Below, piece after piece: positions 3,101-18,859 of a stretch of 39,015 bases of DNA. The stretch lies in contig NC_069005.1 in NCBI RefSeq assembly GCF_001194135.2, positions 30,747,201 through 30,786,215 on the forward strand, written 5' to 3'. The stretch is from Octopus bimaculoides. Lineage: Eukaryota. Within the stretch, counting starts at the first letter, position 1. Every line of letters starts with the position of its first letter. Made by a program: the position numbers and the translations under genes. The notes under the pieces were generated by a model that ran no database searches, was not told the DNA's origin, and worked only from the letters and a program-made list of their open reading frames with translations.

Positions 3101-3676
3101 TTTGTTACAGATTATAAATATCTGTTAATGAAAGATAAATAATCTATACTACACATGTATGTCACCCCAGTAAGTAATGTAATGGTATTGTAGAGGGTGA
3201 TGATAGACACCCCTCCACATACACACATCCCAGCCCTTCCCATGGGGGGGTCTGTGTGTTTGGGGGAAGCAAGAGGTAGGGTGGTGGGATGAGGTAAAAA
3301 AGAGAAGGAAAGGTAGAAGGGGGTGGCTTCAATAGATGTCAGGAGGAAAAAAATAACAGAAAAACATTAATTTTCCTCCTATCTCTTAAGACCATTCCAG
3401 AATGCCTCCAAGACTTACCAAGTCCAAACCTAATTTCATTTGTTCCACCACTTTTCCCAAATCTGTCTTGCTCCCTCTCACTGTATGTATATATATATAT
3501 ATATATATATATTTTAAAACTATATACATAATTATAGCAAGGGGTCGGCATTATGCCTCACCACACACTGTAAGAAATAGACACTAAAGTCCTTTTTACA
3601 ACCTTTAAAATCTCCAAGAATAACTTTAGTGTATAAAACATTAATGTTTTTTTTGTTTTAATCTTTTAATGTTTTA

Positions 3677-3900
3677 AGCTGGGAGAATCGTTAGTATGCT
3701 GGGCAAAATGCTTAGCAGTATTTCGTCTGCAATTATTGTTCTGAGTTCAAATCCTGCCTAGGTTGACTTTGCTTTTCATCCTTTCGGGGTCGATTAAATA
3801 AGTACCGGTTACACACTGGGGTCAGTGTAATCGACCTAATCCCTTTGTCTGTCCTTGTTTGTCCCCTCTATGTTTAGCCCCCTGTGGGCAATAAAGAAAT
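3677..3900 (+). mobile_element. SINE family A (tRNA-derived), variant 3' tail
   Basis: AGAATCGTTAG...GAGTTCAAATCC (B-box-like)...TTTCATCCTTTCGGGGTCGAT..AAATAAGTACC...; tail CCCTTTGTCTGTCCTTGTTTGTCCCC...AATAAAGAAAT. Confidence 0.85.
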
Positions 3901-4233
3901 GTACAGATATACATACATGTGTGTGTGTGTGTGTGTGTGTTATATAATAATGAGGTAAATTGGTAATCGTTTTAATGTGGTGGGGTGGGGTGGAACAAGG
4001 ATTTTATATGGTGCTAATGAGGAAGAAGGCAATCAATATTAATGAGCCTATCTCCTACATAGTATGCTAAAAGATGTCAGTGAGAAGGAGGGGGATGACA
4101 TGAGATCATTACACTTGTGTACCCCCTACTTTGCACTTCCCTTACCTCTTTCTCCCTCCGCCCCCATTATCATTATCCTCCTTCATCCCCCAACAGGATG
4201 TAGGTAACAGGTAGAAAGTAAACTATTACTTAC

Positions 4234-4385
4234 TCTTTTTCCCTCTCTGCTACAGGTAGCTAATTAATTAATTATCAATGGTTATGATAAGATTACAGCA
4301 AACCAGTTGAAGTACTTACCTGGAAAATAAAAAAGTAAAAAAAACAAAATAATTAATGAAATACAAAAAAAAAAAAAAATCAGCA
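4234..4385 (-). other. Candidate recursive splice site (ratchet point) plus 86-nt RS-exon
   Basis: Minus strand reads TTCATTAATTATTTTGTTTTTTTTACTTTTTTATTTTCCAG|GTAAGTAC (junction 4320/4319); second donor AAGA|GTAAGT at 4234/4233. Confidence 0.55.
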
Positions 4386-4408
4386 TATCAACAGATTNNN
4401 NNNNNNNG

Positions 4409-4467
<59 letters not shown>

Positions 4468-4644
4468 TACATAAAGGGTGCAGCAAGAAAAATCCTTCAC
4501 ATCTATTGACAAACGTTTAAATAGCAAAGACACACTGTGGCATCAATCCAAACAATGATGGTAACTCTGTAGCAAAAAAAATGGTAAGATATTAACATGA
4601 AGATGTCCTTACCACCTGCCTATCTTCACTGGTACCACACTAAC

Positions 4645-5023
4645 AGTCCACTGCATCTCACATAAGAACGAGATACTGCAGCAGCCTCGGTTTCAGAGGA
4701 CCTCAGCTCTTTAACGCCCTGCCAAAACATTTGAGAGACCTGCAAGACATGGATATAGAGGTCTTCAAGACAAAACTCGACGCTTTCCTCTCCACGATAC
4801 CAGACGAACCAATGGCTCGAAATGAGACACAGTTTAGGGCAGCGATGTCAAATTCTCTTATACACCAGATGTGCCATCTAAACTCTTGATTGGACTATAT
4901 CAGGTGGAGGAGAAGAGCCATGCAAGGAACGTGAAGAGAGCACAGCATAAAGACGGAAAGTCACAGTGGTGCTCCAGCATGACCACAGCCACTTGGCTGA
5001 AGCGCATAAATAAAAAAAAAAAA
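4645..5023 (+). mobile_element. CR1/L2-group LINE 3' end (ORF2 C-terminus, 3' UTR, A-rich tail)
   Basis: Open frame to TGA 4887-4889: RYCSSLGFRGPQLFNALPKHLRDLQDMDIEVFKTKLDAFLSTIPDEP...RAAMSNSLIHQ, which resembles CR1-type ORF2 C-termini; ends in AATAAAAAAAAAAAA. Confidence 0.8.
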
Positions 5024-6224: not shown

Positions 6225-6879
6225 TAATAATAATAATCCTTTCTACTACAGGCACAAAGTCTGAAATTCGGAGGAGGGGAGGGGAGGGGGCTAGTCAATT
6301 ACAGCGACTCAGTGTATCACTGGTGCTTAAATTATCGACCCCGAACGGATGAAAGGCAAATTTGACCCCGGCGGAATTTGAACTCAAAATGTAAGGATAG
6401 ACGAAATACTGCTAAGCATTTCGACTAGCATGCTAACGATTCTGGATAATAATAATAATAATAATAACAACAACAATGGTTTTAAATTTTTGGCACAAGC
6501 CTAGCAATTTCAGCAGCAGGGTAAGTCAATTACATTGTTCCCAGTGTTCAGTTGGTACTTAGGCAAAGTTTGACCTTGGCAGAATCTGAACTCAGAACAT
6601 AAAGACAGACGAAATACCGTTAAGCCATCCAGTGTGCTTAATGTCTGCCAATAATAATAATAATAATCCTTTCTATTGTAAGCATAAGGCTTGAAATATG
6701 TGGGGGAGAGGACTAGTCGATTACATCGACCCCAGTGTTTCACTGGTACTTTTAATTTATCAGCCCTCAAAAGGACGAAAGGCCAAAGTTTGACTTCAGC
6801 GGAGTTTTGAACTCTGAACGTAAGGTATCTACGGGCGAAATTAACATTAAGCATTTCCGTCCAGCGTGCTGATTGGCCA
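6225..6879 (-). mobile_element. Head-to-tail trimer of SINE family A joined by (AAT)n
   Basis: Three copies at about 6225-6443, 6472-6650 and 6651-6879; the middle copy has an internal deletion. Confidence 0.85.
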
Positions 6880-9904: not shown

Positions 9905-10335
9905 TTTATATTGGTGAGTGTATCCGATGTTCTTTGTTGTTGGTAGTGAGAAAGCAGATGTACATTCGAGAGGTGATATCTTCAATCTGTTTGTTTGGAG
10001 CCAGATTTCTTGTTGATTGATGTAGGCCTGGAGCAGTTTTGCAGATTCCTCGAGGGCTGGGGGTGTGAGCGTCGGTGAAAGGAAAGAGATGTGATATCAC
10101 CTGCATATGAAATTGCATGTATGTTTTTTCAGGATACAGGAAGGTCGTGTGAGTGACGTTTTTTGAGTTAAAAAGAGTGGGAGGGAAGATGGATCCTTGC
10201 GGTACACCATCTGGAAAACGACAGAGTCAAGGTGTGTTGCTCTCATTGCACTGTATTCACCCTTGAAATCCGAGAAGTAAGTTTTTCACCTGCCAGAATT
10301 TCGTGTATTTGTGATAAGAAAATTTGTAAGGAAAT
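9905..10335 (-). pseudogene. Decayed non-LTR retrotransposon reverse-transcriptase fragment (I/Jockey-group-like)
   Basis: DGVPQGSIFPPTLFN at 10211-10167; frameshifted SYAGDIT (eroded YADD) at about 10111-10091; then LEESAKLLQAYINQQEIWLQTNRLKISP, the typical post-YADD segment. Confidence 0.8.
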
Positions 10336-11755: not shown

Positions 11756-12154
11756 GTTGATGATAATGATGCTGCTGCCACAGTTAATGATGACGATGAT
11801 TATGGTGATGATAATGACATGCATAGTTTGTTGCTGCAGTCCTGAAAGTCTCTGCCACCATGTCCACAATCCCTCCCATCCATCGCCCAAACACCACCAC
11901 CCCACACTCACCCACCCCCACGACAAACACTACTTCAACTAGAGTCTACGTCTCCCACCAACCCACTCAACTACCCACCCAATCCAGACAAAGACAAATC
12001 ACAAAGAGCATCAATACCCCTTATTAACCCAACACCTTGAAAACTGTGGTGAGATGCAAACTAATTCAGGATTTTGAAGGACTTTTTGGGGAGAATCCCT
12101 AACCAAGTGCATCACTTGACTTTTAGAGCCCCCCCCCCCCTTCCTTTTAGTGGC

Positions 12155-12760
12155 ATTTCGTCCATCTTTATGTTCCGAGTTCAAATTCCATCAAGGCTGA
12201 CTTTGCTTTTCAGCCTTTCAGAGTCAATGAAATAAGGACCAGTTGAGCCCTGGGATCAATGTAATCGGCTAGCCGTCTCCCCAACCCCCAAATTTCAGGC
12301 CTTGCGCCTATAGTACAATTATTATTATTAAGAAGCTGGTGAGCTGGTAGAATCGTTAGCATGCCGGGCAAAAAGCTTAACAGTATTTCATCTGTCTTCA
12401 CATTTGGAGTTCAAATTCTGCTGAGGTCGACTTTGCCTTTCAACATTTTGGGAGTCGATAAAATAAGTACCAGTTGAACACTGGGGTCGATGCAATCGAC
12501 TCATCCCCTCCCCCAAAATTACTGCCCTTGTGGCAAAATTTGAAACCATTATTATTATTATTATTATTATTATCATCATTATTATAGCAGCAAACAGAGT
12601 CATCGGTGCACAGGACAAAATGCTTAGTGGCATTTCTTCCAGCTTACGGGGGTCATGAAATAAATACCAGCTGTGTACTGGCGTTGATGTAATCGACTAA
12701 ACCCCCTCCCCTCAAATTTCAAACCTTATGCCTATAGCAAAAAGGATTATTATTATTATA
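12155..12760 (+). mobile_element. Head-to-tail trimer of SINE family A joined by (ATT)n
   Basis: Copies at about 12155-12330, 12338-12570 and 12590-12760; tail types alternate (CCTATAGTA / AAAATTTGAAACC / CCTATAGCA). Confidence 0.85.
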
Positions 12761-17754: not shown

Positions 17755-18412
17755 CTTAATAATAATAATAATTTCAAATTTTGGCACAAGGCCAGCAGTT
17801 TTGGGGAAGGTTATAAGTTGGTCACATTGACCCCAGAGTACAACTGGTACTTATTTTACTGACCCTGAAAGGTTGAAAGGCAAAGTTGACCTCAGCAGAA
17901 TTTGAACTCAGAACATAAAGACAGACAAAATGCCACTAAGCATTTTTGCCTGGCACGCTAAAGATTCTGTCAGCTCACCACCCTAATGATAATAATAATA
18001 ATAATAATGATAATAATAATAATGATCCTTTCTACAATAGGCACAAGACCTGAAATTTTGTGGGAGGGTCGATAAATTAAGTTTAACTGGTACTTAATTT
18101 ATCGACCCTGAAAGGATGAAAAGGCAAAGTTGACCTTGGCAGAATTTGAACTCGGAATGTAGCAACGGGCGAAATACCGCTAAGCATTTCGTCCAGCGTG
18201 CTAACGATTCTGCCAGCTCGCCACCTAATAATAATAATAATAATAATGTTCTCTTCTATAGGCACAAGGCCAATATTTGACTGGTTCTTATAGACTCTGA
18301 GAAGATAAATGCAAAGTCGACTTTGTTGGGATTTGAACTCAGAATGTATAGAGCTGGAGGGAATACTACAAGATATTTCATCTGATGCTTTAATGATTCT
18401 GCTAGCCTGACA
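17755..18412 (-). mobile_element. Head-to-tail trimer of SINE family A joined by (AAT)n
   Basis: Copies at about 17758-17983, 18020-18225 and 18245-18412. Confidence 0.85.
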
Positions 18413-18859
18413 ACATAATCGTTAATCTTAATTCCAATGAAGACCAAAGAGAAACAAAGAAAATAATATTTTTTGATATGAAGGAAATTCACAGCATGTT
18501 TCTAAGAAACAGATTATCAAATTAATCCAATTAGTAAAAAAAAATTTTTTTAATTTAAGAAAAACAAGATAAAAGAAGAAATAGAAGAATAAAAAGAAAA
18601 AAAACTAAAATTTTAATTGAAAAAACATAAAAAGGAAATATTTACGATTGGATTAATATGAAATATTTTGATATGAATGAAGAAAATTACTAAGACATCA
18701 TTATAAATTCTTTATCGACAATATCAACAAGAAGAAGCCAATGACAGGGAGATTCTATGTGCTTGCTAGATCTGCTAGAAATAGCAACCAAAGACCTCTT
18801 AAGTCGTACATTACTTACTGTCTTTAAGAAAAGACAGAAGAAAAAACATTTAATCTAGC

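What the first reader, a model, noticed from the sequence alone, without database searches (positions are those of the whole stretch)
4234..4385. Textbook recursive-splicing (ratchet) site with a stop-filled RS-exon
Seen on the minus strand: no AG for at least 75 nt upstream (until the gap), a branch-like CATTAAT about 33 nt upstream, a near-pure U tract, then CCAG|GTAAGTA. The reconstituted donor is an 11-nt perfect complement of the U1 snRNA 5' end (the plus strand reads TACTTACCTGG, 4313-4323). Exactly 86 nt downstream is a second strong donor, AAGA|GTAAGT (4234/4233), preceded by a purine-rich run. The 86-nt interval has stops in all three frames and is not a multiple of 3. Established: Drosophila ratchet points are polyY-AG|GTAAGT, and vertebrate and fly RS sites are defined through a cryptic RS-exon with a downstream competing 5' splice site and premature stops. 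Inference: this window is a giant minus-strand intron removed in steps. I am not aware of recursive splicing being characterised in cephalopods, but could not check.
Basis: partly seen in the sequence, partly recalled or inferred. Interest (0 to 1): 0.85.

Follow-up and report, generated by a model that had tools for sequence, protein, structure and literature searches.

The report
Candidate recursive splice site, untested
A near-perfect splice acceptor fused to a splice donor, with a second donor 86 bases on, sits on the minus strand at 4320/4319 of this repeat-rich animal DNA; the combination is rare for one window, but nothing here shows the strand is transcribed or the site used, so it is a roughly even-odds candidate for stepwise intron removal.

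Summary
The 8-mer AGGTAAGT alone is at chance level (1 found, 1.29 expected). The composite (8-mer, >=90% pyrimidine tract and a GTAAGT donor 25-150 nt downstream) arose in 0 to 5 of 10,000 synthetic windows. It is also one of only two acceptor/strong-donor pairs in the window, both of which use this locus. It is therefore unusual for one window, yet a Gb-sized genome would hold tens of such composites by chance.

All sequence-level criteria for a fly-type ratchet point with a cryptic RS-exon are met. No functional criterion could be tested: transcription, strand, long-intron location, junction or lariat reads, conservation. All attempts to fetch orthologous DNA or find an exon failed. The only hints of minus-sense transcription are weak (T>A skew, fewer AATAAA).

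One claim is wrong. After the first splice the CCAG leaves with the lariat, so only GTAAGTA (7 nt), not the 11-mer, is carried into the reconstituted donor.

The opposite strand also reads as a strong acceptor 64 nt away. I put a functional recursive site at about 0.4 and a chance decoy at about 0.38. If real, it is a new member of a known kind.

The parts
4324..4397 (-). T-rich polypyrimidine tract and AG-free zone upstream of the acceptor. It carries branch-like yUnAy motifs with their A at 4353 (-34), 4336 (-17) and 4328 (-9). On the plus strand it is a degenerate poly(A) tract.
   Evidence: TRF reports 4324-4379 as period-1 'A', 67% matches.
4320..4323 (-). CCAG, the 3' splice-site end. 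The proposed junction is 4320|4319.
   Evidence: TT at -5/-6 and C at -3.
4313..4319 (-). GTAAGTA, the intronic part of the ratchet 5' splice site. Only these 7 nt would survive step 1.
   Evidence: It is the only AGGTAAGT in the window.
4234..4319 (-). Putative 86-nt cryptic RS-exon. It has stops in all three frames, its length is not a multiple of 3, and it has a GA-rich 3' end (about 4234-4250).
4226..4233 (-). Competing downstream donor AGA|GTAAGTAA, with 7 of 11 positions matching the U1-complementary consensus.
4138..4148 (-). Third donor-like site, GAG|GTAAGGGA, with its GT at 4145. It would give an alternative 174-nt exon from 4319.
4228..4255 (+). Mirror-image signal on the opposite strand: branch-like ACTTAC, then a 90%-Y tract, then CAG|GTAGCT, with the exon starting at 4256. 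It is the reverse complement of the minus-strand 'purine run plus GTAAGT'.
   Evidence: It is one of only 3 plus-strand acceptor-like sites with >=90% Y.
4567..4594 (-). Upstream acceptor-like site, ccatttttttttgctacag|AGTTACC, with the exon starting at 4566. It lies 247 nt (plus a gap of unknown size) before the 4319 donor.
4398..4407 (.). 10-N assembly gap 77 nt upstream of the junction. It limits what can be said about the upstream sequence.

Best explanation
The site is best read as a fly-type intronic ratchet point with a cryptic RS-exon on the minus strand. It is a candidate, not a demonstrated case.

Proposed mechanism (inferred, not shown):
1. While a long minus-strand intron is transcribed, U2AF and U2 bind the long U-tract and CAG at 4320. 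U1 binds the GTAAGT at 4233, or the GTAAGG at 4145. Together they define an 86-nt (or 174-nt) exon.
2. The upstream exon is spliced to 4319, which removes the first intron segment as a lariat.
3. This joins the upstream exon's last bases to GTAAGTA and makes a new 5' splice site. If the upstream exon ends in the usual AG, that site pairs with U1 better than AGA|GTAAGTAA does and wins.
4. The stop-filled 86 nt are then removed together with the rest of the intron. If the downstream donor wins instead, the exon is included and the mRNA should be an NMD target.

What is shown: the motifs, their spacing, the stops, and the rarity of the composite in this window. What is inferred: transcription of the minus strand, location in a long intron, and every splicing step.
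For: - The motif is complete and near-consensus: 90% Y tract, TT at -5/-6, CAG|GTAAGTA. It matches 10 of 11 positions of the U1-complementary consensus, the best of all 17 GTAAGT sites in the window.
- The composite occurred in 0-0.05% of synthetic windows.
- Of 42 acceptor-like sites in the window, only two have a GTRAGT donor 30-250 nt downstream, and both involve this locus.
- The interval is short, out of frame and full of stops, as described for cryptic RS-exons (PMC8605326).
- The region 3947-4397 is single-copy within a window that is more than half repeats or gaps (20,487 of 39,015 positions). The site is therefore not part of an abundant repeat family.
- Weak strand hints fit minus-sense transcription. 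In the non-repeat intervals A>T on the plus strand (skew +0.057, 32 of 47 intervals), and AATAAA occurs 65 times on plus versus 28 on minus.
- Literature base rate (Shepard et al., PMC2773006, Table 2): ratchet-type sites occur at 0.48-2.2 per 100 kb in >50 kb introns of all five invertebrates tested, against 0-0.12 on the complementary strand. A high-scoring site on the sense strand of a long invertebrate intron is therefore more often real than not.
- 63-70% of very long fly introns carry recursive sites (PMC6110457).
Against: - There is no evidence of transcription, splicing or conservation. None could be obtained here.
- AGGTAAGT alone is at chance frequency.
- The pyrimidine tract is a degenerate poly(dA:dT) run of a kind common in this sequence (0.8-1.6% of all 20-mers are >=90% Y).
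- The opposite strand reads as an equally strong acceptor 64 nt away, so such signals arise easily in this strand-asymmetric low-complexity DNA.
- The genome looks SINE/LINE-rich, like vertebrate genomes, in which Shepard et al. found no enrichment of such sites (about 0.1 per 100 kb on both strands).
- The competing donor has the same intronic heptamer GTAAGTA, so dominance of the ratchet donor depends wholly on an unknown upstream exon.
- The selection criteria were post hoc.
Confidence: 0.4

Rival explanations
1. Chance decoy. A degenerate poly(T) run happens to abut the one AGGTAAGT that a window of this size is expected to contain, with another GTAAGT nearby. The site is not used, or lies in untranscribed DNA.
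For: - AGGTAAGT occurs once, against 1.29 expected. The 11-mer with up to 1 mismatch occurs once, against 0.77 expected.
- The pyrimidine tract is a degenerate poly(A)/poly(T) run.
- 17 GTAAGT and 222 AGGT occur in the window.
- The order-5 model gives core plus tract in 0.69% of windows, which implies hundreds of such sites per Gb-scale genome (inference).
- A mirror acceptor on the plus strand and an AG|GTAAG minisatellite at 28470-28730 show how readily such strings arise here.
- No exon or gene was detected.
Against: - The full composite appeared in at most 0.05% of synthetic windows.
- C at -3 and TT at -5/-6 also fit a real acceptor.
- This is the only strong (>=90% Y) acceptor paired with a strong donor in the window.
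- In every invertebrate tested, high-scoring ratchet motifs in long introns are mostly non-random (PMC2773006).
Confidence: 0.38
2. Ordinary (non-recursive) minus-strand exon. This would be an 86-nt or 174-nt non-coding, UTR, lncRNA or poison cassette exon whose first bases merely happen to read GTAAGT, or an 'expressed RS-exon' that is normally included.
For: - A strong acceptor, GA-rich exonic enhancer-like run and strong donors at 86 and 174 nt make a good exon-definition unit.
- Mammals have thousands of expressed exons with a 5' splice-site-like start (PMC8605326, PMC6224609).
Against: - Stops in all frames exclude coding use.
- An exact GTAAGT at exon position 1-6 is rare for ordinary exons.
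- No homology or Pfam signal was found anywhere nearby.
Confidence: 0.1
3. Plain 5' splice site. CAG|GTAAGTA at 4320/4319 ends an upstream minus-strand exon that begins at the acceptor-like site at 4566.
For: - CAG|GTAAGT is the canonical donor consensus.
- An acceptor-like site (T9, gctacag) lies 247 nt upstream.
Against: Such an exon would contain T15, (TA)n(TG)n microsatellites and an assembly gap, which is implausible except for a non-coding transcript.
Confidence: 0.04
4. The relevant signal is on the plus strand: a 3' splice site at 4255|4256 (ACTTAC branch, pyrimidine tract, CAG). The minus-strand reading is then its accidental complement.
For: It is one of only three plus-strand acceptor-like sites with >=90% Y. 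A roughly 150-nt C/T-rich tract at 4110-4255 precedes it.
Against: - No strong plus-strand donor follows, and stops follow immediately.
- The A>T skew and the AATAAA excess on the plus strand argue weakly against plus-sense transcription.
Confidence: 0.04

Closest known systems
Drosophila intronic ratchet points with cryptic RS-exons (Ubx, kuz, Bx; Duff et al. 2015, bioRxiv 10.1101/006163; Joseph et al., PMC8605326; Pai et al., PMC6110457)
   Same: - (Y)n-CAG|GTAAGT junction with TT at -5/-6.
- A very strong 3' splice-site half.
- A short cryptic exon that is out of frame and stop-filled, followed by a downstream donor.
   Different: - The fly sites are proven by junction reads, lariats, saw-tooth coverage and deep conservation. 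None of these is available here.
- Fly cryptic exons average about 50 nt and usually have a weaker downstream donor. Here the exon is 86 nt and the downstream donor has the same GTAAGTA heptamer.
- The host here is a large, SINE/LINE- and microsatellite-rich genome, unlike that of the fly.
Vertebrate recursive splicing through RS-exons (Sibley et al. 2015, as summarised in PMC5126111 and PMC6224609)
   Same: - Exon definition of an RS-exon.
- Competition between the reconstituted donor and the downstream donor.
- Premature stops if the RS-exon is included.
- Occurrence in very long introns of repeat-rich genomes.
   Different: - Only a handful of fully suppressed intronic sites are established in vertebrates.
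- Motif density in vertebrate long introns is not above the antisense background (PMC2773006), so a motif alone has low predictive value there.
Pseudoexons and decoy splice sites in long introns (for example the DMD pseudoexons, PMC7175933)
   Same: An acceptor-like and a donor-like site at exon-like spacing inside non-coding, repeat-rich DNA, with stops in all frames.
   Different: Pseudoexons do not normally start with a consensus donor. The AG|GTAAGT juxtaposition is what sets this site apart.
Antisense-retroposon exonisation (Alu-type; recalled from general knowledge, not tested here)
   Same: The pyrimidine tract is the complement of an A-rich, poly(A)-like tract, followed by an AG and downstream donors.
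   Different: - No retroposon body, second copy or target-site duplication was found.
- The stretch 3947-4397 is single-copy in the window.

Membership tests
Intronic recursive splice site (ratchet point with cryptic RS-exon) | [quoted passage not shown] | tested here: met
   ttgttttttttacttttttattttCCAG|GTAAGTAC, with 90% Y at -23..-4. It matches 10 of 11 positions of the U1-complementary consensus.
Intronic recursive splice site (ratchet point with cryptic RS-exon) | TT at -5/-6 (99.5% of fly ratchet points, 10.1101/006163) | tested here: met
   ...TTTTCCAG: T at -5 and -6.
Intronic recursive splice site (ratchet point with cryptic RS-exon) | A downstream 5' splice site that defines a short cryptic RS-exon | tested here: met
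   AGA|GTAAGTAA lies 86 nt downstream and GAG|GTAAGG 174 nt downstream. This is met at the motif level only.
Intronic recursive splice site (ratchet point with cryptic RS-exon) | An RS-exon that is out of frame or carries premature stops | tested here: met
   86 nt, with stops in all three frames.
Intronic recursive splice site (ratchet point with cryptic RS-exon) | A reconstituted ratchet donor that is stronger than the RS-exon donor | tested here: inconclusive
   Both share the intronic GTAAGTA. The exonic -3..-1 of the reconstituted donor come from an unknown upstream exon.
Intronic recursive splice site (ratchet point with cryptic RS-exon) | Location inside a long intron, on the sense strand of an expressed gene | not testable with these tools
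   No exon was found by homology or Pfam. The only hints are T>A on the minus strand and fewer AATAAA on the minus strand.
Intronic recursive splice site (ratchet point with cryptic RS-exon) | Splicing intermediates: exon-to-RS junction reads, lariats with an RS 5' end, saw-tooth nascent RNA coverage | not testable with these tools
   No RNA-seq access.
Intronic recursive splice site (ratchet point with cryptic RS-exon) | Evolutionary conservation of the AG|GT core above the flanking intron | not testable with these tools
   Attempts to fetch orthologous DNA failed. Two six-frame protein queries around the site found nothing. The exact 25-mer is absent from metagenome contigs and genome contigs.
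U1 snRNA gene or retropseudogene (plus strand, TACTTACCTGG = U1 nt 2-12) | Similarity to U1 continuing beyond the first 12 nt | tested here: not met
   The plus strand continues AAAATAAAAAAG.... No U1 match was found, even at E<=10, in 3900-4700.
Member of a dispersed repeat (SINE, LINE or MITE) carrying the motif | Other copies, terminal repeats or target-site duplications | tested here: not met
   BLAST of 3600-4397 against the window found copies only of the SINE at 3630-3900 and nothing for 3947-4397. No convincing inverted or direct terminal repeats were found. Only this 39-kb window could be searched.

The most novel reading that the evidence does not exclude
That would make it the first case in Lophotrochozoa. 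It would show that ratchet points are ancestral to bilaterians and persist in a vertebrate-sized, SINE/LINE-rich genome, against the idea that such genomes replaced ratchet points with repeat-mediated intron folding (PMC2773006).
Probability: 0.3. Interest if true: 0.55.

Novelty: new member of a known kind. Interest (0 to 1): 0.33.

Why it matters
Recursive splicing has been documented by experiment only in flies and vertebrates. Motif enrichment has been reported in a few other insects and in a sea urchin (PMC2773006). I found no paper addressing it in cephalopods or any mollusc.

A validated site would extend the mechanism to a third major bilaterian branch. It would also bear on how very long introns in large, repeat-rich invertebrate genomes are removed accurately. 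A single motif proves none of this. Its value is as a concrete, cheaply testable coordinate, and as a prompt for a genome-wide sense-versus-antisense count.

Tried and rejected
1. Orthologue retrieval for a conservation test failed.
   - I concatenated all six-frame ORFs of at least 22 aa from 3940-4720, and the longer ORFs within about 2.5 kb, as protein queries. There were no hits at E<=1e-3.
   - The exact 25-mer across the junction is absent from metagenome contigs and genome contigs.
   - These collections evidently do not hold this genome or its relatives, so conservation remains untested.

2. The exon hunt, meant to place the window in a gene and fix the strand, found nothing.
   - 70 non-repeat ORFs of at least 45 aa, plus a LINE tail, gave no hit as one query.
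   - About 90 ORFs scanned against Pfam gave no family.
   - The result is inconclusive, because even the transposon fragments found nothing.

3. U1 pseudogene on the plus strand: rejected.

4. Motif carried by a repeat family, a MITE or a retroposon with target-site duplications: no support within the window. The pyrimidine tract is a degenerate poly(A) tract on the plus strand, so an old retroposon tail cannot be excluded.

5. Rfam and tRNA scans. Nothing passed the gathering threshold. The sub-threshold miRNA-like hits at 4405-4483 are (TA)n hairpins.

6. The first simulation script timed out. It was rerun vectorised.

7. MaxEntScan scores could not be computed, because the models are not available offline. 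I used simple pyrimidine-fraction and U1-match counts instead.

8. Species identity could not be verified with any tool.

Full report
**What is in the sequence.**
On the minus strand the window reads ...(N)10 aatctgttgatatgctga T15 gtatttcattaattattttg T8 ac T6 a TTTTCCAG|GTAAGTACTTCAACTGG....

- CCAG occupies 4323-4320 and GTAAGTA occupies 4319-4313. The plus strand reads TACTTACCTGG at 4313-4323.
- No AG occurs in the 77 nt back to the 10-N gap at 4398-4407. The AG-free stretch is 173 nt if the gap is ignored, because the (TG)n(TA)n microsatellite beyond the gap has no AG either.
- The 20 nt at -23..-4 are 90% pyrimidine, with TT at -5/-6 and C at -3.
- Eighty-six nt downstream lies AGA|GTAAGTAA, with its GT at 4233, preceded by GCAGAGAGGGAAAAAGA.
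- The 86 nt have stops in all three frames.
- A third donor-like site, GAG|GTAAGG with its GT at 4145, lies 174 nt from 4319.

**Is it more than chance?**
The 8-mer alone is not. AGGTAAGT occurs once on both strands, against 1.29 expected from dinucleotide-preserving shuffles. The 11-mer with up to 1 mismatch occurs once, against 0.77 expected.

The composite is rarer. I generated 10,000 synthetic windows from each of three Markov models trained on the window.

| Model | 8-mer + >=90%-pyrimidine tract | + GTAAGT donor 25-150 nt downstream |
|---|---|---|
| Order 1 | 0.03% | 0 |
| Order 3 | 0.04% | 0 |
| Order 5 (overfitted; keeps T-runs) | 0.69% | 0.05% |

Multiplying observed frequencies gives about 4-8e-4. 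The inputs, are 0.8-1.6% of 20-mers at >=90% Y and 17 GTAAGT in about 73 kb of two-strand sequence.

A scan for exon-like units found 42 acceptor-like sites in the window. Only two have a GTRAGT donor 30-250 nt downstream, and both use this locus. Of all 17 GTAAGT sites, this one has the best U1 match, 10 of 11 positions.

So the arrangement is unusual for one window. Two cautions apply. The criteria were fixed after seeing the site. At about 5e-4 per 39 kb, a 2-3 Gb genome would still contain tens of such composites by chance, and hundreds without the second donor (inference).

**Surroundings.**
The window is draft animal DNA.

- It has seven N gaps (2,349 N). More than half of it (20,487 of 39,015 positions) is either repeated within the window or N.
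- A SINE copy lies at about 3630-3900 on the plus strand. More than ten further copies occur in the window, and its tail is a (TG)n run.
- The stretch 3947-4397 that holds the site is single-copy within the window.
- A (CA)n(TA)n microsatellite at 4408-4473 follows the gap.
- Plus-strand 4644-5023 looks, from memory of LINE C-termini, like a LINE 3' end: an ORF tail ...FKTKLDAFLSTIPDEP... and a terminal A-run. Pfam gave no match for it.
- An RT-like fragment (GVPQGS...) lies at about 10100-10226 on the minus strand. Pfam did not confirm it either.
- A mariner HTH_48 fragment lies at 31288-31443 on the minus strand (Pfam E = 7.7e-8).
- There are no tRNA genes and no Rfam family at gathering score.
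- TRF scores the pyrimidine tract itself as a degenerate poly(A) run on the plus strand, 4324-4379.
- No recognisable exon exists anywhere in the window. ORFs are microsatellite translations or repeat-derived. Seventy non-repeat ORFs found no homologue, and about ninety had no Pfam domain. This fits intron or intergenic DNA but proves neither, since even the transposon fragments found nothing.

**A mirror image.**
The reverse complement of 'purine run + GTAAGT' is 'ACTTAC + pyrimidine tract'. The plus strand therefore reads acttactctttttccctctctgctacag|GTAGCT, with AG at 4254-4255. This is one of only three plus-strand acceptor-like sites with >=90% pyrimidines in the whole window.

Two of the window's seven strongest acceptor look-alikes thus face each other 64 nt apart. 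This shows how easily this strand-asymmetric, low-complexity DNA generates splice-like signals. The plus-strand site lacks a following strong donor.

**Which strand is transcribed?**
This could not be established.

- In the 47 non-repeat intervals the plus strand has A>T (skew +0.057, 32 of 47 intervals). AATAAA occurs 65 times on plus and 28 times on minus.
- Intron sense strands are generally U-rich and poor in poly(A) signals (general knowledge from other animals, untested in this organism). These asymmetries are therefore what minus-sense transcription would give.
- Old A-rich retroposon remnants on the plus strand would produce the same pattern.
- GC skew gives no signal (26 of 47 intervals).

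**External evidence.**
Conservation is the one decisive test that could have been done in silico, but no related DNA could be obtained. Two concatenated six-frame queries around the site found nothing. The exact 25-mer across the junction is absent from the metagenome and prokaryote-genome collections. No RNA data are accessible.

**Mechanism, and one correction.**
If the minus strand is a long intron, the published model applies directly (PMC8605326, PMC5126111, PMC6224609).

1. The acceptor at 4320 and the donor at 4233 (or 4145) define a cryptic exon.
2. The upstream exon is ligated to 4319.
3. The regenerated donor competes with the downstream donor.
4. If the regenerated donor wins, the stop-filled exon is discarded with the remaining intron.

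CCAG is the end of the first intron segment and leaves with the lariat. Only GTAAGTA (+1..+7) is inherited, and -3..-1 come from the unknown upstream exon.

Both donors share the same intronic heptamer. Skipping of the RS-exon would therefore depend on the upstream exon ending in the usual (C/A)AG. Before step 1, U1 pairing to the intact 11-mer would compete with U2AF. For this reason fly recursive sites have exceptionally strong acceptor halves (PMC6110457), and this site does too.

**How likely is it real?**
Shepard et al. (PMC2773006, Table 2) counted ratchet-type motifs per 100 kb in introns longer than 50 kb, on the intron strand and on the complementary strand.

| Species | Intron strand | Complementary strand |
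|---|---|---|
| Fruit fly | 2.2 | 0.10 |
| Mosquito | 1.0 | 0 |
| Beetle | 0.81 | 0.10 |
| Sea urchin | 0.54 | 0.07 |
| Bee | 0.48 | 0.12 |
| Eight vertebrates | about 0.1 | about 0.1 |

- If this organism behaves like the tested invertebrates and the window is a minus-sense long intron, a near-perfect site is real with odds of roughly 4:1 to 20:1.
- If it behaves like vertebrates, whose repeat-rich genomes it resembles, or if the window is intergenic, the site is a decoy.
- My rough priors are 0.2-0.35 for a long sense intron and 0.4-0.6 for invertebrate-like usage. Combined with the chance rates above, my posterior ranges from about 0.25 to 0.75. These priors are guesses, not measurements.
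- I settle on about 0.4 for a functional recursive site and about 0.38 for a chance decoy. The remainder goes to an ordinary non-coding or poison exon (0.1), a plain donor of an upstream exon starting at 4566 (0.04) and a plus-strand acceptor (0.04).

**Comparison with known systems.**
The site works like, and at sequence level looks like, a Drosophila intronic ratchet point with a cryptic RS-exon.

- Motif-level membership features were all met: juxtaposed sites, TT at -5/-6, a downstream donor, and an out-of-frame stop-filled exon.
- The relative-donor-strength criterion is inconclusive.
- The criteria that actually define membership could not be tested: long-intron sense location, splicing intermediates and conservation.
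- It is not a U1 pseudogene.
- Within this window, it is not part of a repeat family.

**Novelty and verdict.**
The searched library has no paper on recursive splicing in octopus, cephalopods or molluscs beyond incidental co-mentions. If real, the site would be a new member of a known kind in an unstudied lineage. That would be useful but not surprising, given the enrichment seen in all invertebrates tested.

As it stands this is a well-described, statistically unusual, functionally untested candidate. Interest is 0.33. The cheap decisive tests are annotation lookup, junction and lariat reads in existing RNA-seq, cross-species alignment, and a genome-wide sense/antisense motif count.

Noticed in passing
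window 28470-28730, minus strand: A degenerate 26-28-nt minisatellite. Its unit reads (t)ttattag|GTAAGGATCTgtgctgtctt, so about 5-8 tandem AG|GTAAG junction-like motifs sit on the same strand as the finding. It accounts for 5 of the 7 AGGTAAG strings on the minus strand, and there are none on the plus strand. It may be only a repeat. If the minus strand is transcribed, it is a cluster of U1-site or ratchet-like motifs.
   Followed up: partly
window 4228-4323, both strands: Two of the window's seven strongest acceptor look-alikes (>=90% pyrimidines) face each other 64 nt apart, with exon starts at 4256 on plus and 4319 on minus. The minus-strand 'purine run + GTAAGT' is the complement of a plus-strand 'ACTTAC + pyrimidine tract + CAG'.
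   Followed up: yes
whole window, 47 non-repeat intervals: There is a consistent A>T skew on the plus strand (+0.057, 32 of 47 intervals). AATAAA occurs 65 times on plus and 28 times on minus. This is compatible with minus-sense transcription, or with old A-rich retroposon remnants on the plus strand.
   Followed up: partly
window 31288-31443, minus strand: Fragment of a mariner/Mos1-type transposase N-terminus (Pfam HTH_48, E = 7.7e-8).
   Followed up: yes
window ~4644-5023 (+) and ~10100-10226 (-): LINE-like remnants, identified by eye only. One is an ORF tail ...FKTKLDAFLSTIPDEP... ending in an A-run. The other is an RT-like motif, GVPQGSIFPPTLFN. Pfam gave no match for either.
   Followed up: partly
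window 3630-3900 (+), and 6294-6870, 12147-12704, 17807-18416, 27005-27400, 30824-30922, 38665-38726: At least a dozen copies (65-80% identity, both orientations) of one SINE-like element, several with microsatellite tails. A second family shows up as translated text ('CPRCHAVGLNPEPCGWE') at several places.
   Followed up: partly
window ~29540-29970 and ~31050-31480, plus strand: A dispersed repeat pair that shares ORF text (CQKEG..CMVWWRSSCYICLVIQS; NARRRGGAWCGGD.HVTYVLSFN). The family was not identified, and Pfam found nothing.
   Followed up: no
window 4405-4483, both strands: Sub-threshold Rfam matches to several miRNA precursor families (mir-1277, mir-297 and others; 20-43 bits against gathering scores of 75-100). 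They are caused by the self-complementary (TA)n microsatellite and are not a gene.
   Followed up: yes
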